64,000 nt of DNA from Octopus sinensis (lineage: Eukaryota). The stretch is taken from assembly GCF_006345805.1 (NCBI RefSeq), contig NC_043018.1:19220001-19284000 (forward strand), in the 5' to 3' direction. Positions 4,901 to 49,975 of this stretch are shown here, piece by piece. The first letter of the stretch is position 1; every line of letters begins with the position of its first letter. The notes beneath the pieces were generated by a model. The model saw only the letters and a list, made by a program, of their open reading frames with translations. It did no database searches and had not been told where the DNA came from. Position numbers and translations under genes: made by a program.

Positions 4901-5661
4901 CTACTTCTTTACTGCCCACAAGGGGCTAGACACGGAGAGGACAAACAAGGACAGACAAACGGATTAAGTCGATTACATCGACCCCAGTTGGAAACTGGTA
5001 CTTTATTTAATCGACCCCGAAAGGATGAAAGGCAAAGTCAACCTCGGCGGGATTTGAACTCAGAACATAGCGGCAGACGAAATACCTATTTCTTTACTGC
5101 CCACAAGGGGCTAAACACAGAGAGGACAAACAAGGACAGACAAACGGATTAAGTCGATTATATCGACCCCAGTGCGTAACTGGTACTTAATTTATCCACC
5201 CCGAAAGGATGAAAGGTAAAGTCGACCTCGGCGGAATTTGAACTCAGAACGTAACAGCAGACGAAATGCCTATTTCTTTACTGCCCACAAGGGGCTAAAC
5301 ACAGAGAGGACAAACAAGGACAGACAAACGGATTAAGTCGATTATATCGACCCCAGTGCGTAACTGGTACTTAATTTATCGACCCCAAAAGGATGAAAGG
5401 CAAAGTCGACCTTGGCGGAATTTGAACTCAGAACGTAATGGCAGACGAAATACCTATTTCTTTACTGCCCACAAGGGGCTAGACACGGAGAGGACAAACA
5501 AGGACAGACAAACGGATTAAGTCGATTATATCGACCCCAGTGCGTAACTGGTACTTAATTTATCGACCCTGAAAGGATGGAATGCAAAGTCGACCTCAGC
5601 GGAATTTGAACTCAGAACGTAACGGCAGACGAAATACAGCTATGCATTTTGCCCCGCCGCC
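4901..5661 (-). mobile_element. SINE family 1 tandem tetramer inside one TSD
   Basis: Units start at 4902, 5087, 5271 and 5455 (184-185 bp). TSD GCCAGACAATCATAC at 4886-4900 and 5664-5678. Confidence 0.85.
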
Positions 5662-5859: not shown

Positions 5860-5919
5860 CAACTTGATTGGGAAGTGGAACTGGCCATCGTTGTCGGTAA
5901 AGAAGGGAAGAATATTTCC
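5860..5919 (+). CDS. FAHD2: FAHD2-like exon B (QLDWEVELAIVVGKEGKNIS)
   Basis: Pyrimidine tract plus ttccAG at 5858-5859, donor GTaagt at 5920. The exon is 60 nt, phase 0/0, and encodes the metal-binding D(W/Y)EVELA motif. Confidence 0.95.
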
Positions 5920-6803
5920 GTAAGTATCTTCTTTGTTATTTCAAACATTTCTCTTCTCTTAGACCTTTCTTTCGTGTTTCTTTGTTCCTTTGCTTCTTTT
6001 TAGATTGATTCCATTCTTGACTATCTTCAGATGGTTTTGTTCCTTCATACAAACATGTCTTTTAGACTTTGGATACTTATATCTTAGCCTCCTAGCTCCC
6101 TGATCTCCAAGCCATGAACCCTATCGAGTAACATTACTCCAGAAGGTCCTTTAGAGGACCCCCATTTCAGCTGCTTTCCTCATCAAAATTCAACCAAAGC
6201 ATGGATTTCTTTTACTTTTCTTGACAGAATGCCATTGCTCTCTTCTCCCTTTCCTTAGCAGGATACAGCTCCTTTCTTGGTGGAACTTGACCAGAGCAAG
6301 CCCTTTTCTCTCTTCCACTAGCTAGTCTTAATATCAGACACATTCAGATTGAATGAGACATCAGTTTACTGTATCTCTATTCCTCTAGTTCATGTGCTTG
6401 ATTTCCCTCACTCTTATGGTTCTTGTCTCTCATGTACTTTGTGAAATGAAGTGGTGAGAAAGGACCTTTGGATGCTGGGCCTCACTAAGGAAATGATAGG
6501 GGACCAGGAGATTGGTAATTAGCTGTACTTGATAAAACAAGTCAAGCTAAGTATAATTGCTCACATACAGGCTGATCCTTTCAGGTGCTGGTGCCACATA
6601 AAAGGCACCCATGCCGGTGCTGCGTTAATGCACCCACATTGGTGCTGTGTATATGCATCCATGCTGGTGGCACATAAAAAGGGGTTGCTGTCAGGAAAGG
6701 CATCCAGCCATAGAAACCACGTCACATCAGGTCACTCTCTTGGTTTGCCAGCCTCGTGTCAAACTGTCCAATCCATGCCAACATGGAAAGCAGACATTAA
6801 ACG

Positions 6804-9699: not shown

Positions 9700-9921
9700 C
9701 AGCACCGGGCGGCTGGGGGTGTTTGTCTCCCCTTCATAAATGTATATAAGGACACAGGAAAAATGTGTCAAAGCCATCAGGAGGCGTCGAGGCTTCCTAG
9801 GGCTAAACAGCAGTGGTGTACCCCCTACTGTGACGTTCGTGTTAGATTGACAGTATACAACCATTCTATCGCCCCACCACCGTACATGTCTCTATGAGAG
9901 ATTTAGAAATTTAGTATTTCT
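9700..9921 (+). mobile_element. Family A single-arm copy
   Basis: gatgcagcaccgggcggctgggggtgtttgtctcccc...gagagatttagaaatttagtatttct matches the right arm and tail of 20789-21026. Confidence 0.75.
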
Positions 9922-10073
9922 GATATATATATATATATATATCTATATTGTATAGAGGGCATTATTACATATAAATGCCTCACACTAAGAGGGACAAAGT
10001 CATTACTACCAAAATTATACTAATCATACCTAAATGCAGTTTTTCAAAGCAAGACATTTAAAAAAATGAATTT

Positions 10074-10131
10074 AGTTCTGTATCACCATGATTTCACATT
10101 CAACTTACATCTTATGATCATCAGCAGAACT
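10074..10131 (-). ncRNA. Type I hammerhead ribozyme, array copy 1
   Basis: - strand: agttctg CTGATGA tcataagatgtaagttgaatgt GAAA tcatggtga TA cagaact. Stem I is 7 bp; stem III is A-U plus tca/tga; triplet AUA; cleavage predicted between 10081 and 10080. Confidence 0.8.
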
Positions 10132-10554
10132 GATTCTGAACACATCATAAATAAACTACCAACCTTACGTAGCGAAGACGAACAGACAACTGCCCACTCC
10201 GGCCAAGCACATGGAATGTTTATAAATCATATATCCGGTAAATGGCGGGCTTTTTACGAACTGCATGTCGGGTAATGAAAAGTATTTCGGAATAAGTTTA
10301 ACAATTAAGGATAATCTCTTAATAAGGGATCTTAACAAGAAATTATCGGGTAGTTAGCGTGAAAACCTCATAAAAGAAAAGAATTCGAAAATAATTTTTT
10401 TTCTTTTGAACAAATTAATTATATCTATATTGTATAGAGGGCATTATTACATATAAATGCCTCACACTAAGAGGGACAAAGTCATTACTACCAAAATTAT
10501 ACTAATCATACCTAAATGCAGTTTTTCAAAGCAAGACATTTAAAAAATGAATTT

Positions 10555-10612
10555 AGTTCTGTATCACCGTGATTTCACATTCAACTTACGTCTTATGATC
10601 ATCAGCAGAACT
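10555..10612 (-). ncRNA. Type I hammerhead ribozyme, array copy 2
   Basis: - strand: agttctg CTGATGA tcataagacgtaagttgaatgt GAAA tcacggtga TA cagaact. Stem II is capped by gac-GTAA-gtt (GNRA loop). Confidence 0.8.
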
Positions 10613-11034
10613 GATTCTGAACACATCATAAATAAACTACCAACTTACGTAGCGAAGACGAACAGACAACTGCCCACTCCGGCCAAGCACATGGAATGTT
10701 TATAAATCATATATCCGGTAAATGGCGGGCTTTTTACGAACTGCATGTCGGGTAATGAAAAGTATTTCGGAATAAGTTTAACAATTAAGGATAATCTCTT
10801 AATAAGGGATCTTAACAAGAAATTATCGGGTAGTTAGCGTGAAAACCTCATAAAAGAAAAGAATTCGAAAATAATTTTTTTTCTTTTGAACAAATTAATT
10901 ATATCTATATTGTATAGAGGGCATTATTACATATAAATGCCTCACACTAAGAGGGACAAAGTCATTACTACCAAAATTATACTAATCATACCTAAATGCA
11001 GTTTTTCAAAGCAAGACATTTAAAAAATGAATTT

Positions 11035-11086
11035 AGTTCTGTATCACCGTGATTTCACATTCAACTTACGTCTTATGATCCTCAGC

Positions 11087-11087
<1 letters not shown>
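11035..11087 (-). ncRNA. Hammerhead, array copy 3, with 5'-truncated stem I
   Basis: Core CTGAGGA with the same stems II and III as copies 1-2. Only 2 bp of stem I remain before the (TA)n flank. Confidence 0.6.
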
Positions 11088-11834: not shown

Positions 11835-11906
11835 TATATATATATAACAAAACTTCATGCTGCATCAATGATATGTCACATATTTACTTTGTTATTGTTT
11901 ACAATA

Positions 11907-12258
11907 GAATGGTTGTATACTGTCAACTTAACGTGACAGTCCTGTAAGGGAATTTCACCACCGCTGTTTAGCCCTAGGAAGCATCGATGCTTCCTGTCGG
12001 CCTTGACACATTATTCCTGTGTCCTTATATACATTTACGAAGGGAAGACAAACACCCCCAGCAGCCAGGCCTGCATCGTATATAAGGACACAAGAATAAT
12101 GTGTCAAAGCCATCAGGAAGCGTTGATGCTTCCTAGGGCTAAAAAGCGGTGGTGTAACCCCCTACTGTCACGTTCACGTTAGATTGACAGTATACAACCA
12201 TTCTATCGCCCCCACCACCGTATATATCTCTATGAGATATTTAGAAATTTAATATTTC
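11907..12258. mobile_element. Family A fold-back copy with 11-bp TSD; HHR lost at the junction
   Basis: Inverted arms homologous to those at 20567-20968, with the same tail (ttctatcgccc...ttagaaatttaatatttc). TSD TGTTTACAATA at 11896-11906 and 12259-12269. Confidence 0.75.
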
Positions 12259-12361
12259 TGTTTACAATAATTTTCTCTTTAAATGGAGCGGGATGTTTAA
12301 AGTTAGAAACGCACACGAGTTGACGTAACGAATATTTTAGAAATAGATGTTAAATACTGTC

Positions 12362-12422
12362 TCCAACTGAGGATTACAAAGCATGTTTTATCATGCACAG
12401 CATGAAATCAATTGATATTGGG
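12362..12422 (+). ncRNA. Type I hammerhead motif, sense to FAHD2
   Basis: tccaa CTGAGGA ttacaaa-gcatgttttatcatgc-acagcat GAAA tcaattga TA ttggg. Stem I is 5 bp and stem III is palindromic; the base of stem II is imperfect. Confidence 0.65.
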
Positions 12423-12629
12423 CTATGTATTAAAAGTGGCTTCAAATTCCAGGCAGGCTTATTTTTAAAATATTCATTACATTGCTTCTGTGTGTATTTA
12501 TCATAGAATTGGTGGTTTTTATGAAGCTTAATCCTTCTTTTCTTTAAATATTTTATACCTGTTTAGGTAGAAGTCTTGCTAGCCACTTCGTTATCACTGA
12601 TTTTAACAGTAATAATACTTCACATATTT

Positions 12630-12664
<35 letters not shown>

Positions 12665-14932: not shown

Positions 14933-15095
14933 CTCAAAGAAGCAATGTCTTACGTGTTTGGTTACACTGTTGCCTTTGACGTGAGCGCCCGAGACTGGCA
15001 GCTGCAGAAAAATGGACAACAATGGCTTCTGGGGAAATCTATGGATACGTTTTGTCCTTTGGGACCATGCATTGTTATGAAAGAAGACATTGCTG
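14933..15095 (+). CDS. FAHD2: FAHD2-like exon C ([54 protein letters not shown])
   Basis: Acceptor tttcAG at 14931-14932, donor GTaaat at 15096. The exon is 163 nt, phase 0/1, with DVSARDWQ and [13 protein letters not shown] motifs. Confidence 0.95.
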
Positions 15096-23958: not shown

Positions 23959-24474
23959 CACAATTCCATATGTATTTATGGATTTTCACATACATACATA
24001 CACACAGAAACACACACATATATATATATATACACACATACATAAATATATATCTTTTATATATGCATGTGTGTGCAATTTACATATATGTATATATAAT
24101 ATACATATATTATAATATGCATATAAATATTTATATATACTTTATCTCTCTCTTTCTCTTACTCTCTCTCTCTCTCTCTCTCTCTTTATATATACACATA
24201 TATATATATATATATTATATATATATATATGTATGTATGTACACAATTCCATATGTATTTATGGATTTTCACATACATACATACACACAGAAACACACAC
24301 ATATATATATATACACACATACATAAATATATATCTTTTATATATGCATGTGTGTGCAATTTACATATATGTATATATAATATACATATATTATAATATG
24401 CATATAAATATTTATATATACTTTATCTCTCTCTTTCTCTTACTCTCTCTCTCTCTCTCTCTCTCTTTATATAT

Positions 24475-24531
<57 letters not shown>

Positions 24532-24682
24532 CACATACATATATATACACATACATACACATATATCTATTTGTGTATATGGATGTTCCCACACACATAT
24601 ATACATACAAATTTGCATATATATCTTTTATCTTTTGTATGTGTGTGTGTGTGTGTGCATATGCATTTACAAGGATATGGAA

Positions 24683-24729
<47 letters not shown>

Positions 24730-24791
24730 TGAGAGGATAAGGAAAGAAACGATAATGTAATAATTTTATATGGAATTGCTTTGTTCTTCAG

Positions 24792-24900
24792 ATATAGGAA
24801 ACCTTGGAATTCGATGCCGAGTGAATGGAGTACCAAAGCAGAATAGTAATACTTCAATGCTTGTACACAGTGTGGAGAAACTAATTGTCTTCATATCTCG
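24792..24900 (+). CDS. FAHD2: FAHD2-like exon D ((D)IGNLGIRCRVNGVPKQNSNTSMLVHSVEKLIVFIS(R))
   Basis: Acceptor ttcttcAG at 24790-24791, donor GTtggt at 24901. The exon is 109 nt, phase 1/2, fits its neighbours, and aligns with FAHD2A [26 protein letters not shown]...LIAWVSQ. Confidence 0.9.
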
Positions 24901-25778
24901 GTTGGTATTTAGTCTTGGAATATTTTCTTGCAGTGCAATTGTCTTTTGATTGCTGTTTATTTTTTTTCATAGAATTTTCCTTCTATTAAATTGTAATTAT
25001 CCGTGGAAGGTTCTTCAGCTATTTCTAAATTTATTTTCTTTACTTTGCTTTTATTTATCCTATCTTATCTTTTAAAATGCTATGCTTTCCGTAGCTCTGG
25101 AGGAGGAGGAGGAGGAGATCATTAAGAGTAGTTTCCATTGTTGTTATGTTGTACACATAATGGAATGCCTATATGAGGCAGCGCTTGAAAGTTCCTGGCT
25201 TTGGGTAAGAGAAAATACAGGAGAATCAGTTAATTATGAGTTTATTCAACAGAGTTCTGTTTCAATACAGAATTATCAATTTACTGGAATGCAACAACTT
25301 CGAATGCCAACCAACCTGTTTGCCAGTTAACCCATTAAAAAAAATAAAGATGCGCCCTTTTAAAGCCTAGCGAGGATCATGGGCCCTGTTTTCCGGTTTC
25401 TATGGGTATTGTCAACTTGGGGGTGGAGGACAAACACACACACACAAACACGCATTCACACACACACACACACACACTCACAAATACACACATGCACACA
25501 CACATACAATGGGCTTCTTTCAGTTTCCATCTACCAAATTCACTTACAAGGCTTGGACGGGACGCCAGTCCATCGCAGCGTTACTCAATTTTGCCAGCTG
25601 AGTGGATTGGATCAACGTGAAATGAAGTGTTTTGCTCAAGAACACAACGCGTCGCCCGGTCCAGGAATCGAAACCACGATCTTACGATCATGATACTGAC
25701 ACCCTAACCACTAAGCCACGTGCCTCTACCCAGTTAACCCATAATGGAGTGAATATGTGAGCAGTATATATATATATA

Positions 25779-26187
25779 TCTTTACTACCCACAAGGGACT
25801 AAACACAGTGAGGATAAACAAGGACAGACATAGGTATTAAGTCGATTACATAGACCCCAGTGCGTAACTGGTACTTAATTTATCGACCCCGAAAGGATGA
25901 AAGGCAAAGTCGACCTCGGCGGAATTTGAACTCACAACGTAACGCAGACGAAATACCTATTTCTTTATTACCCACAAGGGGCTAAACACAGAGGTAACAA
26001 ACAAGGACAGACATAGGTATTAAGTCGATTTCATCGACCCCAGTTCGTAACTGGTACTTAATTTATCGACCCCGAAAGGATGAAAGGCAAAGTCGACCTC
26101 GGCGGAATTTGAACTCACAACGTAACGCAGACGAAATACCGCTAAGCATTTCGCCCGGTGTGCTAACGTTTCTGCCAGCTCGCCGCC
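25779..26187 (-). mobile_element. SINE family 1 tandem dimer
   Basis: Two units joined at gacgaaatacc|tatttctt; flanked by atgtgagca(g/a)tatata at 25755-25770 and 26191-26206. Confidence 0.8.
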
Positions 26188-26714
26188 TTCATGTGAGCAA
26201 TATATATACTCAAAAATACCTGTTGATTAAAGCGGAACCCCAAAATCCACGTGCAAAACAAAGCAGTATGCAAATTAGAAGAACTATTATTTGTACAAAT
26301 TAACAAAATACAAAGACATTTACTAAACAAGGCAAAAGCCACCAAACTCAGTTCGATACCAAGTCAGAACAGAACTGAATTAGAGCAATATAACAAACAG
26401 ACTTAACAGGTGGCGAGCCTGCAGAAACGTTAGCACACCAGGCGAAATGCTCAGCAGTATTTCGTCTGGCGCTACGTTCTGAGTTCAAATTCCGCCGAGG
26501 TCGACTTTGCCTTTCATCCTTTCGGGGTCGATAAATTAAGTACCAGTTATGCACCGGGATCGATGTAGTTGACTTAATCCCTTTGTTTGTCTCTGTGGGC
26601 AATAAAGAGATATATAACAAACAGACTTACACAATTATTGCAACAGTCTTTCAGTTATTCTAAATTATTCGGAATGTTTGGCCTCCAACCAGGCTTCTCG
26701 TGATGCCCCCCGCC

Positions 26715-26825
26715 CTTGCAGCCCCCACCCTTGCAGCACCCACCCTTGCAGCACCCACCCTTGCACCCCCACCCTTGCAGCCCCCACCCTTGCAGCCCCT
26801 ACCCTTGTAGCCCCCACCCTTGTAA
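26715..26825. repeat. 15-bp minisatellite (CCTTGCAGCCCCCAC)
   Basis: About seven tandem copies. Confidence 0.9.
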
Positions 26826-27406
26826 TATTAGAAATATAACATACTGTTATACAGTGGCTGTGTGGTTAAGAAGCCTGCTTCTTAACTATATCGTCCTGGG
26901 GTCAATTCCATTGTGTGGCACCTTGGGCAAAAGTGTCTTCTACTGTAGCCCCAGGTCAAGCCAAGCCTTGTAAGTGAATTTGGTAGATGGAAACTGAAAG
27001 AAGCCCATTGTATGTGTGTGTTTGTGCATGTGTGCATGTGTGTATTTGTGAGTGTGTGTGTGAATGCGTGTTTGTGTGTGTGTGTTTGTCCTCCACCTCC
27101 AGTTGACAATACCTACACGCACCCATGGAAAAAAGCAGAAGCAAGAGTCATGAGTACACAGAAGTACCCCAGTTATATGTAAATGTAAAATCCTTTAGCA
27201 AGTATCAGCACACGTGTGACTAGTCACGAACCACGACTTTTAGTGGTTACCAGTCCCGAAGTGAATGGTAATAAATTTACTTCTAATATAGGATAAAATT
27301 TTTTCAAAAAAAATTTCATCAAAGTGGCCAGCATATTAAAATACCTTTAAAAGCGAAAATTATAAACAATTATATGGGTATTTGTAGGTATTTCATGTAT
27401 TTCTTA

Positions 27407-27476
27407 TCGTATTCTCTACTGAAGAGGGGAAAATCCGTGGGATTAATCCCGAAATTGATTCAATATAGAGATAACG
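27407..27476 (+). ncRNA. Canonical type I hammerhead ribozyme, sense to FAHD2
   Basis: tcgt-at-tctcta CTGAAGA ggga-a-aatcc-gtg-ggatt-aa-tccc GAAA ttg-att-caa TA tagaga-ta-acga. All core nucleotides are canonical, G10.1-C11.1 is present, stem I is 6 bp plus a distal 4 bp; cleavage predicted after 27464. Confidence 0.85.
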
Positions 27477-27943
27477 AATCTTTTTCATTAAAAATTCTGT
27501 TAGCTTGCTTTCCTCGATTTCAGCAGGACGTGTATTCATGGTGAATGTAATGTGGTGATTGACAATTTAAAGTCTATTCTCAGCATATTGGCACAGAAAT
27601 CCTTTTTCTTTTCCACTTGTTTATAATTATATATATATATATATATATCACCGTGACCGACCAGGCTATCAGATGTTGCTACACATCATTGGTCACAATG
27701 CGCTTCGCATTGTTTTAGCCTTCAAATGACGCCACCCCGCTGGCTAAGCGAGCAGGCCAACAGAAGAAAGAGAGAAAGATGTGGCGAAAGAGTACAGCAG
27801 GGATCGCCACCACCCCCTGCCGGAGCCTCGTGGAGCTTTAGGTGTTTCCGCTCAATAAACACCCACAACGCCCGGTCTGGAGATCGAAACCGCGTCCCTA
27901 CAACCGCGAGTCCGCTGCCCTAACCACTGGCCCATTGCGCCTC

Positions 27944-27992
<49 letters not shown>

Positions 27993-27998
27993 ATATAT

Positions 27999-28048
<50 letters not shown>

Positions 28049-28173
28049 TATATATATATATATCTGTCTATATAGTGCATCATCATTTTTTAATGATTAT
28101 TATTTAGCAATAACTTTGATATTTTTGTCAATAAGATGAATTATTTTCTTGTTAATGTTCTGTTTTCTGTTAG

Positions 28174-28261
28174 GTTTGTCACTTTGAAACCCGGGGATGT
28201 AATTCTAACTGGAACCCCTCTCGGGGTTGGTGTCTTCAGAAACCCTCCAGAATTTTTAAAG
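28174..28261 (+). CDS. FAHD2: FAHD2-like exon E ((R)FVTLKPGDVILTGTPLGVGVFRNPPEFLK)
   Basis: Acceptor ctgttAG at 28172-28173, donor GTaagg at 28262. The exon is 88 nt, phase 2/0, with the TL.PGDVILTGTP.GVG motif. Confidence 0.95.
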
Positions 28262-29508
28262 GTAAGGACCATGTAAAGTGTCAAATCAGATTGTTTAACA
28301 AAGTGAATGTCTCTATTGGTGATTGAAGTACTGCAGCTGGCCATGTCTATAAGGTAACAGCCGACAGTCGACTGAGTGGTCAGTTGTGGTGTGTCTGTGA
28401 CCAAAATAGTTTGTATTGGCTCAGGCCATGTAAGTGGGTCTCACAAGGAGTTGTTAATTCACTGCTGTGGCTGCCTTGTAAGATTTAATGCTTTGTTGTT
28501 GTTGCTGTTGTTGCTGTTGTTAATGCTGTTGTTTAACCCCAGGTCAACTATGATTGAGCCAATGGTTCAGCTGTGATCTACAAATCTATTGGTTCAGGTA
28601 TATATGTTTCTTTATTACCCACAAGGGGCTAAACATAGAGGGGACAAACAAGGACAGACAAACGGATTAAGTCGATTACATCGACCCCAGTGCGTAACTG
28701 GTACTTAATTTTATCGACCCCGAAAGGATGAAAGGCAAAGTCGACCTCGGCGGAATTTGAACTCAGAACGTAACGGCAAACGAAATACGGCTACGCATTT
28801 CACCCGGCGTGCTAACGGTTCTGCCAGCTCACCGCCTTATATACCTGGTTCAGGTATATAACCACAGGCACGGCTTTGTGCCTTATAGCTGCAAGCTGGG
28901 TCAAGGAGACTCTGAAGTTTGCTTCTTAATCATGGGGTGGGGGTGGGGGTGTGGGTTTGGTTCTGTTTCAGTGTGGAACATATTGGGCATGGGGTCTTCA
29001 CACAGACTGCTACATCACATGACACAGACTGCTGCATCACATGATCGATCCTCCACGTCACATGACAAACTACTACAACACATGACTGATTATGTATTCC
29101 CACTGGACACCAACAAAACAAGGCCTTGATATGTATATTTACCTACAGACGTGTTCCCTTCAAGGAAAGAAGTGCACCCTTGTGAATAATGTTGTTATGC
29201 CCTTTTCTCCTGGAATTGTATTCCCTTCTGATCTTGTGCCCTTGCTTTGAAAAATTTTGGAGATCACACCACCTGTTCACCCCCACCCCACAGAGTTGAA
29301 TGATAGTTTTTACTTCAATTGTGAGCAGGAGCCAAGGAGGGTGTCTACACGTGTCCTCCAAGATTATTGACAAACACCAACTGGCTCCAAGACTTTTGGC
29401 AAAGTATTCAAAATTATCCATAATCAGGAATATTACTGTAACTTCTTAAAAAAATCACAGCGGGTACATAGGATGATGTATGCCTTGGTACACTTTTCCT
29501 GAGAAAAA

Positions 29509-29608
29509 NNNNNNNNNNNNNNNNNNNNNNNNNNNNNNNNNNNNNNNNNNNNNNNNNNNNNNNNNNNNNNNNNNNNNNNNNNNNNNNNNNNNNNNNNNNN
29601 NNNNNNNN
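29509..29608. other. Assembly gap (100 N)
   Basis: Run of exactly 100 N; this length is a typical placeholder for a gap of unknown size. Confidence 0.99.
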
Positions 29609-30806
29609 AACACTGTTCTGCTGCTGCCTTATCTGGGACAGTGCTGCTGCTCTACATCCAAATATCCAAGATCGAACCCCCAATCAAGGCCACCAGACTA
29701 ATTGATAGGAACTCCAATGTCCCTAATATTGCGCACCGTATAACCTTTCAAACAATAATTATAACACGAAAAAGAACTCATTGGATAATGTAGGCCGGTG
29801 ATGGCCACGATTGGAATACCTAGACTAAACAACAACAACAACAACAACAACATCAAGTGGAGGCGCAATGGCTCAGTGGTTAGGGCAGCGGACTCGCGGT
29901 CGGAGGATTGCGGTTTCGATTCCCAGACCGGGCGTTGTGTGTGTTTATTGAGCGAAAACACCTAAACAGCTTCACGAGGCTCCGGCAGGGGTGGTGGCGA
30001 CCCCTGTTGTACTCTTTCGCTCCAACTTTCTCTCACTCTTTCTTCCTGTTTCTTGTCCCCGACTTCCTATGCAACCGATGAGCCTGGATGCGCATCCATC
30101 CATCCGTCGATGCTCTCGGTGTCGGGGGTTGACCTGCTTTCTCTTCTGTGGATCTTACGAATAGTAAAGAACCACGTTTCGGACTTCTCTCATCTTGCGA
30201 GCTCTGGGTCGAAGACCGTTCGCTCAACGCAACAGCAACAGCAGCAACATCAACAACAACATCAAGAACAAGAGTAGCGGCAGTAGCAGCAACAGCAACA
30301 GGGCCATTCTATCTTTTCAACAGCTACCACCGTAACCGCTGCCCCCCAAGGAGCTAACTGGTCGTCTGCTATTTCTTCTTATGTATTGGTGGCAGACGAC
30401 CCCAAATCTCCCTCGTAGGATCTTATAAAAATGGAAGAGGACATCAGATAATGTGGTCTTAGATACATTGTGTATGCAAACGAAAAGAAAGAAGACGTGA
30501 TGGTGATATTTGAAACGCATTGGTCTGCTGGAATGGAGCTAACAAACAACAATATCACACTTCATAAATTTCAGATGAGTTGTAGATGTTTACCAACAGT
30601 CTGTGGTTTGGAATTTTACTCTCACCAGAATCTATAGCATACACTCATTAATAAAACAAAGAATGAAGACCACACACGCGCCTGCGCACGCACACACACA
30701 AATAGATATACATACATGTATATATTTATATATAATATACATATAAGCACACACGTACATATATGTATGTATGAATGTGTGTGTGTGTGCCTATAATATA
30801 TATATA

Positions 30807-48163: not shown

Positions 48164-49210
48164 TATATATATATATACATATATATATGGATTGTATATA
48201 TATATATATATAATATTATATATATATACATATTATATATGTATGTATATATGTATATATTATATATATATGTATATAGTATATATATATATATACATAT
48301 ATATATGTATGTATATGTGTATATATATATATATATATGCTCTTTTAATCTTTTACTTGTTTCAGTCACTTGACTACGGCATGCTGGAGCACCGCCTTTA
48401 GTCGAGCTAATCGACCCCGGGACTTATTATTTGTATGCCCAGTACTTATTCTATCGGTATTTTGCCTAACCGCTAAGTTACGGGGACATAAACACACCAG
48501 CATCGGTTGTCAAGCAATGCTAGAGGGACAAACACAGACCCACAAACATACACACACACACATGTATATACATATATAAGACGGGCGTCTTTCAGTTTCC
48601 GTCTACCAAATCCACTCACAAGGCTTTGGTCGTCCCGGGGCTATAGCAGAAGACACTTGCCCAAGATGCCACGCAGTGGGACTGAACCCGGAAGCAAGTT
48701 ACTTACCACACAGCCACTCCAAACAGCTGAGTAAACTGGAGTACCTTGCTCATGAACACAACACAGCCCGGTCCAAGAATCGAACTCACAACCTCACGAT
48801 TGTAAACTCGACGCTCTAACCACTGAGCCATGCACCTTCATACTTAATATATATTTACACTATTGACAGGCAAGCTATTCTTACGGAGTGTTTTATTTAA
48901 AGACACAATATATAGATCAGAAGAAGACGAAAACAGCAGTAAATAAGGGCAAATATATAAATATATAAAAAGAAAAAATGCCAATATACTGAGAATAGAC
49001 TTTATATCGTCAATCACCACATACAATATACTTCTCTATGAATACACGTCGTGGTGAAATCGAGGAAGGCAAGCCAACAGAATTGTATATATATAGTACG
49101 TTTAAATATTTGCTGTGCAAGATTTTTTATGTGAAGTCTTGTGTTGAAACAGATATTGTGCGTGTGTCTTTATTGGCTAAACTGGCAATATGACCATTCC
49201 GAAATATAAC

Positions 49211-49499: not shown

Positions 49500-49975
49500 A
49501 AATGAATTATCTATTTCGGATTATTCAAATGATAACCGATACCTGGGTAGCAAAATCACAACAGAAAGCACAGTTGAGGTTAGGACCATGGGGCCTAAAA
49601 TCCGTGCCTTAGTGTGGAAATTTGAATTTTTATATATTTAGTGTAGGAAGAAATGGAGCTGAACGAAGATTAACAAAAATTCCTTTTATTATTTTCTACA
49701 TATGTTTCAAAGGCTGCAAAGTCCCTAATTCGGATTGAATAAGGAGTCCATTTTGCAGCCTTCTCTTAATTCTCCAACAAAGTTTGTCGAAAAGCTTGCT
49801 GTGCATTTTGTTTGTTGCAGAATTAAGTTCCTGGATTTTCCTGAAGAGAAGGCTGCAAAATGGACTCCTTATTCAATCCGAATTTGGGATTTGCAGCCTT
49901 TGAAACATATGTAGAAAATAATAAAAAGGAATTTTGTTAATTCTTCGTTCAGCTCCATTTCTTCCTACACTAATA
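49500..49975. mobile_element. Asymmetric fold-back HHR element, family B
   Basis: Inverted arms at about 49631-49767 and 49845-49975, with a one-sided extension to ~49500, embedded in (TA)n. A homologous inverted copy lies at 13247-13490. Confidence 0.7.
49835..49919 (+). ncRNA. Canonical type I hammerhead ribozyme
   Basis: attttc CTGAAGA gaaggctgcaaa...tttgcagccttt GAAA c-atat-g TA gaaaat. Stem I is 6 bp, stem II is 12 bp, GUA triplet; cleavage predicted after 49913. Confidence 0.82.

What the first reader, a model, noticed from the sequence alone, without database searches (positions are those of the whole stretch)
27407..27476. Fully canonical hammerhead on the sense strand of a FAHD2 intron
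Seen: complete CUGAAGA/GAAA core, G10.1-C11.1, extended stem II, 4-bp stem III, 6+4-bp stem I with an internal loop, and an AUA triplet. It lies in the intron between exons D and E on the transcribed strand. Inference: every FAHD2 pre-mRNA would carry it and could be cut at 27464/27465 about 700 nt before the 28174 acceptor. Either splicing tolerates a severed intron or the cut modulates output. It lies in a ~470-bp unique-looking block ending in (TA)n, probably a PLE pLTR remnant.
Basis: partly seen in the sequence, partly recalled or inferred. Interest (0 to 1): 0.75.

Follow-up and report, generated by a model that had tools for sequence, protein, structure and literature searches.

The report
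Transposon-borne hammerhead ribozyme in FAHD2 intron
A complete hammerhead self-cleaving RNA motif does sit on the transcribed strand of a FAHD2 intron, but it looks like one of several ribozyme-carrying mobile-element copies scattered through this stretch of cephalopod genome, so it is a new example of a known kind, not a new regulatory device.

Summary
The motif is real. Window 27407-27477 (+) has the full hammerhead core (CUGAAGA, GAAA, A15.1-U16.1, A17), a G10.1-C11.1 pair and three helices in type I topology. Helix I is 6 bp, an internal loop, then 4 bp. Helix II is 4 bp, an A-rich internal loop, then 5 bp. Helix III is 4 bp. Chance is unlikely: 3.3 Gb of random sequence gave no motif this good.

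It lies in the sense strand of the GT-AG intron 24901-28173 of FAHD2, 708 nt before the acceptor.

A covariance model built from it found relatives in the same window:
- a 480-bp x 2.4 tandem array (9938-11087, minus strand) with one hammerhead per unit;
- a decayed copy at 12355-12429;
- a third type at 49829-49930, inside an inverted-repeat pair.

All abut (TA)n, as does the candidate's roughly 500-bp block. Helices covary between copies. The orthologous Argonauta hians intron (861 bp) lacks the motif.

Best reading: a solo unit of a retrozyme / Penelope-like non-autonomous element, carried passively in the intron. Self-cleavage and any effect on FAHD2 are untested. New member of a known kind; moderate-to-low interest.

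The parts
27407..27477 (+). Whole type I hammerhead motif (71 nt)
   Evidence: Sequence reading. It is the only descriptor hit in the window. With the core held unpaired, the lowest-energy fold is exactly the three-helix hammerhead, -16.4 kcal/mol.
27407..27418 (+). Helix I 5' strand: outer UCGU 27407-27410, internal loop AU 27411-27412, inner UCUCUA 27413-27418
   Evidence: It pairs with 27466-27477. Pair probabilities are 0.9-0.99 in the isolated motif and with upstream flanks of 20-200 nt.
27419..27425 (+). Catalytic core strand C3-U4-G5-A6-A7-G8-A9 (CUGAAGA)
   Evidence: Direct reading.
27426..27450 (+). Helix II. Canonical register: G10.1-C11.1, G-C, G-C, G.U, then an AA/AA internal loop, AAUCC/GGAUU and a GUG loop. 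Alternative register: G27426 bulged, then GGGA/UCCC.
   Evidence: The bulged register is 0.8 kcal/mol more stable. [quoted passage not shown]
27451..27454 (+). G12-A13-A14 and A15.1 (GAAA)
   Evidence: Direct reading.
27454..27464 (+). Helix III hairpin: A15.1-U16.1, U-A, U-A, G-C, with loop AUU
   Evidence: Direct reading.
27465..27466 (+). A17 (27465) and predicted scissile bond 27465/27466; the cleavage triplet AUA is 27463-27465
Evidence: This follows from the established rule that hammerheads cut 3' of H17.
27466..27477 (+). Helix I 3' strand: UAGAGA, internal loop UA, ACGA
27119..27622 (+). Roughly 500-bp non-coding block carrying the hammerhead. The motif sits about 290 nt from the block's 5' edge and 144 nt from its 3' edge. 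Putative solo unit of a hammerhead-bearing non-autonomous retroelement.
   Evidence: The 5' edge is inferred from where the neighbouring (CA)n-containing SINE copy stops matching other copies. The 3' edge is at (TA)n. ORFs across it have no protein relatives.
27493..27593 (+). 3' sub-segment of the block with a second copy in the window
   Evidence: It is 86% identical over 106 nt to 49084-48979 (minus strand). That copy starts right after a TA run and also ends in T/TA-rich sequence, as a 5'-truncated retro-copy would.
27623..27648 (.). (TA)n microsatellite at the 3' end of the block. It continues at 27946-28074 beyond an inserted tRNA-derived SINE (27650-27945, minus strand).
24901..28173 (+). 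FAHD2 intron (GT...AG, 3273 nt) holding the motif, between exons 24792-24900 and 28174-28261
   Evidence: tblastn with Argonauta hians FAHD2 (P0001) and reading of the splice sites.
9938..11087 (-). Relative: tandem array of 2.4 units of 480 bp, 99% identical, each with a type I hammerhead (10068-10136, 10549-10617, and a 5'-cut copy 11029-11086), with (TA)n on both sides
12355..12429 (+). Relative: decayed hammerhead of the same architecture (only 2 of 4 pairs at the base of helix II), about 205 nt upstream of (TA)n
49829..49930 (+). Relative of a third type: complete core, 6-bp helix I, 11-12-bp helix II with a large loop, palindromic helix III. It lies in the right arm of inverted repeat 49638-49767 / 49844-49973, which is flanked by (TA)n.
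   Evidence: Rfam Hammerhead_1 scores 20.3 bits, below the gathering score of 34.

Best explanation
The 71-nt motif is a genuine type I hammerhead ribozyme. It belongs to a roughly 500-bp non-coding retroelement unit of the retrozyme / Penelope-like non-autonomous kind. The unit inserted into a (TA)n microsatellite inside a FAHD2 intron, in the same orientation as the gene.

In the element's own life cycle the ribozyme cuts multimeric element transcripts into unit-length RNAs. Here there is only one copy, so it can at most cut the intron once, between 27465 and 27466. That would leave a 2',3'-cyclic phosphate on the upstream piece and a 5'-OH on the downstream piece.

For the host it is most likely a neutral passenger. 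Either it cuts too slowly to matter in the few seconds to tens of seconds before the acceptor 708 nt downstream is made, or splicing tolerates the cut.

Shown: the motif, its improbability by chance, its strand and intron position, relatives with covarying helices in the window, the (TA)n association, and its absence from the Argonauta intron.

Inferred: the retroelement origin of this particular block, catalytic competence, and the lack of host function.
For: 1. Complete core and three helices; the only hit in the window; about 3e-6 expected per window by chance.
2. With the core held single-stranded, the best fold is the hammerhead. Helices I and II stay at 0.7-0.99 probability with upstream flanks, so they can form as transcribed.
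3. A covariance model from this one sequence finds 10549-10617 and 10068-10136 (24 bits, E about 1e-3) and 12355-12429 (17 bits, E about 0.06).
4. The first two hits fall in a 480-bp x 2.4 tandem array at 99% identity, bounded by (TA)n, whose first copy is 5'-truncated. This is the organisation described for non-LTR retrozymes and Penelope partial tandems (PMC7229834; PMC8557442; 10.64898/2026.07.22.740005).
5. Across the four aligned copies 90% of cells pair, against 29-43% when partners are slid. 17 of 23 pairs change on both sides.
6. Shared details not demanded by any descriptor:
- an AUA triplet;
- a 4-bp helix III with a 3-nt loop;
- a 6-bp helix I followed by an internal loop and a 4-bp closing helix;
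- a 4-position helix II base followed by a purine internal loop and an inner hairpin.
7. A relaxed descriptor finds 4 instances in the window against 0.01 expected.
8. The 3' part of the block has a 5'-truncated second copy next to TA repeats.
9. Penelope-like elements are abundant and recently active in Octopus (PMC13282606). Their hammerheads lie near 3' ends, and several clades prefer microsatellite targets.
10. About 43% of Xenopus retrozyme copies overlap introns, and monomers are spread evenly along chromosomes.
11. The Argonauta hians orthologous intron is 861 bp of (GGT)n-like repeat with no motif.
Against: - No full-length second copy of this block, and no copy of its own family that carries the hammerhead, could be found. 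So the claim that the hammerhead belongs to the element's consensus is unproven.
- Outside the hammerhead the block shows no significant similarity to the 480-bp unit or to the 12355 element. Anchored identity just upstream is only weakly raised (19/40; 5 of 566 offsets do as well).
- No Penelope RT/EN coding remnant is in the window.
- No Rfam hammerhead model reports the candidate even at E<=10 on 96 nt.
- The nearest-neighbour model prefers, by about 3 kcal/mol, a fold in which U4-A7 pair with the 3' strand of helix III. The young tandem copies show the same or a larger gap, so this says little.
- The covariation counts come from an alignment fitted to the structure and from only three independent sequences.
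- No genome of the same or a sister species was reachable, so age and conservation within Octopodidae are unknown.
Confidence: 0.75

Rival explanations
1. Domesticated intronic ribozyme. The hammerhead is kept by the host because co-transcriptional cutting of the intron tunes how much FAHD2 mRNA is made, as proposed for the amniote intronic hammerheads and shown for the intronic CPEB3 ribozyme.
For: - Sense orientation in an intron of an intact, conserved gene.
- The core and all helices are intact, and this is the best-formed of the hammerheads in the window.
- Published work shows fast intronic ribozymes lower expression while slow ones do not (Fong et al. 2009, as cited in PMC10919898).
Against: - Absent from the Argonauta orthologous intron.
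- It sits in a transposon-like block at a (TA)n site, among SINE insertions, in a window with several similar element-borne hammerheads, including an antisense array and a decayed sense copy in another intron of the same gene.
- No match to Rfam HH9 or HH10.
- The cut site is only 708 nt from the acceptor, so only a very fast ribozyme could beat definition of the 3' splice site.
Confidence: 0.04
2. Chance resemblance. The sequence satisfies the hammerhead descriptor by accident and has no ribozyme ancestry.
For: - No Rfam hammerhead hit.
- The overall folding z-score is only -1.4.
- No homologous copy with the motif was found.
- The first-stage scan may have looked at many windows.
Against: - Expected frequency is about 0.07 per 3.3 Gb of random sequence for the helix and core criteria alone. 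The extra closing helix on helix I and the inner hairpin of helix II come on top of that.
- Three other loci in the same 64 kb carry hammerheads of the same or a related build, against 0.01 expected.
- It shares unforced details with the tandem-array hammerhead.
Confidence: 0.05
3. Part of a still-active element. The block is a live source copy whose transcripts, driven by FAHD2 read-through or its own promoter, are processed by the ribozyme and retro-copied.
For: - Intact ribozyme.
- Penelope-like families are recently active in Octopus.
- The neighbouring 480-bp array is 99% identical between units, hence young.
Against: - A single hammerhead cannot release a unit-length RNA or a circle. The preprint defines active non-LTR retrozymes as tandem units each with a hammerhead and treats monomers as non-mobile offspring.
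- The only other copy of this family in the window is 14% diverged and truncated.
- A SINE has since inserted into its terminal (TA)n.
Confidence: 0.08
4. Dead relic. It is ribozyme-derived and element-borne, as in the best explanation, but catalytically inactive as it stands, for example because loop-loop contacts are lost or it misfolds. The intron would then never be cut.
For: - The alternative fold is favoured by about 3 kcal/mol.
- Metazoan Penelope hammerheads showed low or no activity as single motifs in vitro (PMC4209133).
- The tertiary contacts cannot be verified.
- The family appears roughly 7% diverged from its consensus.
Against: - All invariant core positions are intact.
- Helix III is 4 bp, so no dimer is needed.
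- The internal loops sit 6 bp (helix I) and 4 bp (helix II) from the core, the spacing described for canonical type I motifs.
Confidence: 0.3

Closest known systems
Non-LTR retrozymes of metazoans (type I hammerhead in each unit of a short tandem repeat; PMC7229834; 10.64898/2026.07.22.740005)
   Same: - Type I hammerhead in a non-coding, AT-rich unit of a few hundred bp. Published consensus lengths are 51-972 bp; this block is about 500 bp.
- Solo monomers are common and often intronic.
- A bona fide tandem array of a related hammerhead (480-bp units) lies 16 kb away in the same gene.
   Different: - The candidate is a single unit, not a tandem.
- It has no detectable sequence similarity to the neighbouring array outside the ribozyme.
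- There are no RNA data for circles.
- No report for cephalopods turned up in the library I could search.
Hammerheads of Penelope-like element pseudo-LTRs (PMC4209133; PMC8557442)
   Same: - The motif lies near the 3' end of the unit.
- (TA)n/microsatellite target preference.
- 5'-truncated copies; partial tandems and inverted pairs at neighbouring loci.
- Long helix II, and an optional unpaired base between A9 and 10.1 with G10.1-C11.1 kept.
   Different: - Metazoan Penelope 'min-HHRs' have no helix III, or a 1-2-bp palindromic one, and a 4-5-bp helix I. They need dimers.
- This motif has a 4-bp helix III and a 6+4-bp helix I, so it can fold alone.
- No RT/GIY-YIG ORF is nearby.
Amniote intronic hammerheads HH9/HH10 (RECK, CTCL, DTNB introns; reviewed in PMC6155905)
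   Same: A type I hammerhead on the sense strand of an intron of a protein-coding gene, thought to derive from retroelement hammerheads.
   Different: Those are conserved at orthologous sites across birds, reptiles and mammals. This one is missing from the only orthologue available and gives no Rfam HH9/HH10 match.
Schistosoma Sm-alpha / canonical metazoan type I hammerhead
   Same: Helix I is 6 bp followed by an internal loop and a closing helix; helix II is 4 bp before its loop. This is the 6/4 architecture stated in PMC4209133. The finer comparison with Sm-alpha is from memory and is a lead, not a test.
   Different: 'Loop 2' here is an A-rich internal loop closed by a further 5-bp hairpin. 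The conserved loop nucleotides could not be checked. Rfam Hammerhead_1 does not score it.
CPEB3 HDV-like intronic ribozyme (PMC10919898)
   Same: Concept only: self-scission inside an intron competing with co-transcriptional splicing.
   Different: A different ribozyme fold, conserved in mammals, about 10 kb from the next exon, with a demonstrated effect on expression.

Membership tests
Hammerhead ribozyme, type I (structural class) | Core C3 U4 G5 A6 N7 G8 A9 ... G12 A13 A14 | tested here: met
   CUGAAGA at 27419-27425 and GAA at 27451-27453.
Hammerhead ribozyme, type I (structural class) | A15.1-U16.1 pair and a non-G nucleotide at position 17 | tested here: met
   A27454-U27464 and A27465.
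Hammerhead ribozyme, type I (structural class) | Three helices around the core, with helix I open-ended | tested here: met
   Descriptor hit with helix I 6 bp, helix II 4 bp, helix III 4 bp. The constrained minimum-energy fold equals the hammerhead.
Hammerhead ribozyme, type I (structural class) | G10.1-C11.1 pair | tested here: met
   G27426-C27450, or G27427-C27450 in the bulged register.
Hammerhead ribozyme, type I (structural class) | Loop-loop tertiary contacts between helices I and II | tested here: inconclusive
   Internal loops sit 6 bp (helix I) and 4 bp (helix II) from the core, the canonical spacing. The contacts themselves cannot be computed here.
Hammerhead ribozyme, type I (structural class) | Site-specific self-cleavage | not testable with these tools
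   Needs an in vitro transcription/cleavage assay.
Rfam Hammerhead_1 (RF00163), HH9, HH10 and other curated hammerhead families | Covariance-model score at or above the gathering threshold | tested here: not met
   No hammerhead family is listed at gathering, nor at E<=10 on 601 nt or 96 nt. The tool does report Hammerhead_1 at 20.3 bits for the neighbour at 49835-49919, so the miss is specific to this variant.
Non-LTR retrozyme | Type I hammerhead in the repeat unit | tested here: met
Non-LTR retrozyme | Tandem arrangement of units, each with a hammerhead | tested here: not met
   There is a single unit at the candidate locus: no tandem repeat there and no second hammerhead within the intron. 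The feature is met by the neighbour at 9938-11087.
Non-LTR retrozyme | No coding capacity | tested here: met
   Only short ORFs. The two ORFs across the motif have no relatives in 5.8 billion and 1.8 billion protein sets.
Non-LTR retrozyme | Sequence homology of the unit to a tandem retrozyme family | tested here: not met
   No significant similarity to the 480-bp unit outside the ribozyme. The genome-wide search was not possible.
Non-LTR retrozyme | Expression as unit-length circular RNA | not testable with these tools
   No RNA data.
Penelope-like element (pLTR remnant) | Adjacent RT plus GIY-YIG endonuclease ORF or its remnants | tested here: not met
   No ORF of 130 aa or more resembles RT or EN. 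Motif scans for YxDD, YIGxT, GxYxIxC and DKG are empty on all six frames. This was a motif test only, not a profile search.
Penelope-like element (pLTR remnant) | Hammerhead near the 3' end of the unit | tested here: met
   The motif ends 144 nt before the terminal (TA)n; compare PMC8557442 Fig. 1 legend.
Penelope-like element (pLTR remnant) | Metazoan min-HHR build: helix III absent or 1-2 bp and palindromic, helix I 4-5 bp, helix II 6-8 bp, extra base between 9 and 10.1 | tested here: not met
   Helix III is 4 bp with a 3-nt loop and helix I is 6+4 bp. Only the long helix II and the optional bulged G fit.
Penelope-like element (pLTR remnant) | Insertion into microsatellites; partial tandem or inverted 5'-truncated copies | tested here: inconclusive
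   (TA)n lies at the 3' end, and there is a 5'-truncated copy of the 3' part at 48979-49084. There is no tandem or inverted partner at the locus itself; both are seen at the neighbours.
Host-retained intronic hammerhead (HH9/HH10-like) | Sense orientation inside an intron | tested here: met
Host-retained intronic hammerhead (HH9/HH10-like) | Conservation at the orthologous intron in other species | tested here: not met
   The Argonauta hians intron (L001 14461-15321) has no motif and no similarity.

The most novel reading that the evidence does not exclude
The hammerhead is catalytically fast and retained by the host, so that co-transcriptional cutting of this intron sets FAHD2 mRNA output in an octopod. 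It would be the first invertebrate counterpart of the amniote intronic hammerheads or the CPEB3 ribozyme.
Probability: 0.04. Interest if true: 0.65.

Novelty: new member of a known kind. Interest (0 to 1): 0.35.

Why it matters
On its own, little. Hammerheads carried by Penelope-like elements and retrozymes are widespread in animals, and many copies sit in introns.

Two modest points of interest remain.

First, I found no report of cephalopod hammerhead elements in the held literature. Yet this one 64-kb window holds at least three distinct types, including a young 480-bp tandem array. Octopod genomes may therefore hold a rich, undescribed set of (TA)n-targeting ribozyme elements that current Rfam models largely miss.

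Second, the candidate is a monomer-competent hammerhead on the sense strand of an intron in an intact housekeeping gene. That makes it a convenient natural test of whether splicing tolerates a self-cutting intron.

Tried and rejected
1. Rfam scans at gathering and at E<=10 gave no hammerhead family at the candidate. The tandem-array copy also gave none. Only the 49.8-kb motif gave a sub-threshold Hammerhead_1 match.
2. I tried to reach other genomic copies through translated ORFs across the motif. The + strand 56-aa ORF against the 5.8-billion protein set gave nothing. The minus-strand 48-aa ORF against 1.84 billion representatives gave nothing.
3. An exact look-up of the exon-6 ORF in public assemblies found nothing on record.
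4. Exact-pattern scans of JGI metagenome contigs, one for the hammerhead and one for the conserved 3' segment, gave 0 hits each. This was as expected, since those collections are not animal genomes.
5. The orthologous intron could be fetched only from Argonauta hians. It has no similarity and no motif. No Octopus FAHD2 protein was in the database.
6. A Penelope RT/EN motif search found nothing in the window or in the Argonauta locus.
7. I tested homology of the block's flanks to the 480-bp unit and to the 12355 element by local and global alignment against shuffles. It was not significant. Anchored ungapped identity upstream was weak.
8. tRNA-like head: ARAGORN found none in 24000-30500.
9. 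I tested a downstream 'anti-ribozyme' pairing (27509-28 with the core). Its energy advantage is no larger than with shuffled downstream sequence, so I dropped it.
10. I also dropped the MFE-versus-hammerhead energy gap as an activity predictor. The young array copies show the same gap.
11. The last FAHD2 exon was not found in the window. A 100-N gap at 29509-29608 may hide it.

Full report
**Observation**

Reading 27407-27477 on the + strand gives UCGU-AU-UCUCUA / CUGAAGA / GGGGAAAAUCCGUGGGAUUAAUCCC / GAAA / UUGAUUCAAU / A / UAGAGA-UA-ACGA. This is a hammerhead in type I topology, with helix I open.
- All invariant core positions are present: C3-A9, G12-A14, A15.1-U16.1, and A at position 17.
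- G10.1-C11.1 is present.
- Helix I is 6 bp, then a 2x2 internal loop, then 4 bp.
- Helix II is 4 bp (the last a G.U), then an AA/AA internal loop, a 5-bp inner stem and a GUG loop.
- Helix III is 4 bp with a 3-nt loop.

- The last outer pair needs 27477.
- Hammerheads cut 3' of position 17, so the predicted bond is 27465/27466.
- Part of the 'unique' block (27493-27593) has a second copy in the window.

**Is it more than chance?**

My type I descriptor hits only this site in 64 kb on both strands. A loose version gives 0.0175 hits per dinucleotide-shuffled window. In 3.3 Gb of first-order Markov sequence with the window's composition there were 454 loose hits. None reached helix I >=6 bp, helix II >=4 bp with G10.1-C11.1, and helix III >=4 bp together. 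The product of the marginal fractions predicts about 0.07 per 3.3 Gb.

The closing 4 bp of helix I and the inner hairpin of helix II are extra. The strict thresholds were set after seeing the motif, so the number is generous. Even so, chance is a poor explanation.

**Folding**

The unconstrained minimum-energy fold keeps helices I and II but pairs U4-A7 with the 3' strand of helix III (-19.5 to -20.3 kcal/mol). With the core held single-stranded, the best fold is exactly the hammerhead (-16.4), in a register with G27426 bulged and GGGA/UCCC paired.

An unpaired base between positions 9 and 10.1 with G10.1-C11.1 retained is a stated trait of Penelope-element hammerheads (PMC4209133). Upstream flanks of 20-200 nt do not disturb helices I and II. 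The 3-kcal gap says little, because the young tandem-array hammerheads show a 4.6-kcal gap. A possible downstream competitor pairing is no stronger than with shuffled sequence.

**Gene context**

FAH-domain exons lie on the + strand. A 192-aa concatenate finds FAHD2 proteins, the best being Argonauta hians at 79% identity.

tblastn with that protein places exons at 175-399, about 5863-5925, about 14936-15094, 24792-24900 and 28174-28261. The intron 24901-28173 starts GT and ends AG. The motif is therefore on the transcribed strand, 708 nt before the acceptor.

The last exon was not found. A 100-N gap lies at 29509-29608.

**Relatives in the window (the key result)**

No Rfam hammerhead model reports the candidate. 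A covariance model built from the candidate alone (R1) and run without filters found three further sites:
- 10549-10617 (minus strand), 24.1 bits, E about 1e-3;
- 10068-10136 (minus strand), 23.4 bits;
- 12355-12429 (+), 17.2 bits, E about 0.06.

The two minus-strand hits are 481 nt apart inside a tandem array at 9938-11087: period 480, 2.4 copies, 99% identical. The array has (TA)n at both ends. Its 5'-most copy is cut off inside the ribozyme, starting at C3. That is the organisation of a non-LTR retrozyme or a Penelope-type partial tandem (PMC7229834; PMC8557442; 10.64898/2026.07.22.740005).

The array's hammerhead shares features with the candidate that no descriptor demands:
- an AUA triplet;
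- a 4-bp helix III with a 3-nt loop;
- a 6-bp helix I followed by an internal loop and a 4-bp closing helix;
- a four-position helix II base, then a purine internal loop, then an inner hairpin.

The base pairs themselves are mostly different and compensatory. On the four-sequence alignment 90% of cells pair, against 29-43% with slid partners. 17 of 23 pairs change on both sides. Two caveats apply. The alignment was fitted to the structure, and there are only three independent sequences.

The array's helix II opens with a U.U mismatch. This variant is described for axolotl retrozyme hammerheads (PMC7229834).

A second model (R2) also picked up 49829-49930 (+). It has a complete core, a 6-bp helix I, an 11-12-bp helix II with a large loop and a palindromic helix III. 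Rfam Hammerhead_1 scores it 20.3 bits, below the gathering score of 34. It sits in one arm of an inverted repeat, 49638-49767 / 49844-49973, flanked by (TA)n. This resembles the inverted 5'-truncated pairs described for Penelope-like elements.

A relaxed descriptor counts four instances in the window against 0.01 expected.

**The candidate's own block**

The motif sits in a non-coding block of about 500 bp (about 27119-27622). It is about 290 nt from the block's 5' edge and 144 nt from its 3' edge. In the 480-bp unit the corresponding distances are 284 and 128 nt.

The block ends in (TA)n. A tRNA-derived SINE later inserted into that (TA)n.

Segment 27493-27593 recurs at 49084-48979 (minus strand, 86% identity). 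That copy starts directly after a TA run and ends in T/TA-rich sequence, as expected of a 5'-truncated retro-copy.

Outside the ribozyme I found no significant similarity between this block and the other hammerhead elements. They are therefore separate families or very diverged. No Penelope RT/EN remnant is in the window.

**Comparison across species**

Only the Argonauta hians locus could be fetched. Its orthologous intron is 861 bp of (GGT)n-like repeat, with no motif and no similarity to the block.

**Interpretation**

The best-supported reading is a solo unit of a hammerhead-bearing, (TA)n-targeting non-autonomous retroelement of the retrozyme / Penelope-like kind, inserted in sense orientation in a FAHD2 intron.

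Penelope-like elements are abundant and recently active in Octopus (PMC13282606). In Xenopus about 43% of retrozyme copies overlap introns, and monomers are regarded as immobile offspring.

With one ribozyme, the only possible reaction is a single cut of the intron at 27465/27466. Whether it happens is untested. The intact core, the self-sufficient helix III and the canonical 6/4 spacing of the internal loops speak for some activity. The low in vitro activity of metazoan Penelope hammerheads and the unverifiable tertiary contacts speak for caution. I put measurable self-cleavage at roughly 60%.

An effect on FAHD2 would need a rate of several per minute, because the acceptor is only 708 nt away. 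Published work shows that fast intronic ribozymes lower expression while slow ones do not. The gene's exons and splice sites are intact, and another sense-strand (decayed) hammerhead and an antisense array sit in another intron of the same gene. A neutral passenger is therefore the economical view.

**Verdict**

The regulatory inference is unsupported. This is a new member of a known kind, of moderate-to-low interest. The more interesting by-product is the density and variety of hammerhead elements in this window.

Noticed in passing
window 9938-11087 (minus strand): A tandem array of 2.4 units of 480 bp, 99% identical. Each unit has a type I hammerhead (10068-10136, 10549-10617, and a 5'-cut copy at 11029-11086). 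(TA)n lies on both sides. It is antisense to FAHD2, inside the intron between the exons at about 5925 and about 14936. It looks like a young non-LTR retrozyme or Penelope-type partial tandem. The predicted unit RNA is 481 nt (10561 to 10081).
   Followed up: partly
window 12355-12429 (+): A decayed hammerhead of the same build: core and AUA triplet intact, a palindromic helix III (AUCAAUUGAU), and only 2 of 4 pairs at the base of helix II. It lies about 205 nt upstream of (TA)n at 12634. Like the candidate, it is sense to FAHD2.
   Followed up: partly
window 49638-49973: An inverted-repeat pair (arms 92-96% complementary) flanked by (TA)n. The right arm carries a complete hammerhead (49829-49930; Rfam Hammerhead_1 at 20.3 bits, sub-threshold). 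The left arm is its 5'-truncated mirror. A 5'-truncated copy of the candidate's 3' segment lies about 550 bp away (48979-49084), so this looks like a nest of (TA)n-targeting elements.
   Followed up: partly
window 11904-12032 / 12078-12206, and 9705-9818: A foldback (MITE-like) element with 129-nt arms, 84% complementary. A further 114-nt copy is 89% complementary. These copies abut both the tandem hammerhead array and the 12355 element.
   Followed up: no
window 25775-26140, 4940-5624 and 14 other sites: A SINE-like unit of 183-185 bp occurs in short tandems (2 copies at 93% identity; 4 copies near 5 kb) and 16 times in the window. Related copies occur in the Argonauta locus at about 70-78% identity.
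   Followed up: no
window 27650-27945 (minus strand): A tRNA-derived SINE (tRNA-like head with A and B boxes) inserted into the (TA)n that ends the candidate block. A similar copy lies near 29700-29960.
   Followed up: no
window 28262-64000; N run 29509-29608: The last FAHD2 exon (about 19 aa in Argonauta) could not be found downstream of exon 28174-28261. A 100-N assembly gap lies where it would be expected.
   Followed up: partly
locus L001 14461-15321 (Argonauta hians): The orthologous intron is 861 bp made almost entirely of (GGT)n-like microsatellite, against 3273 bp of stacked transposon copies in the window.
   Followed up: yes
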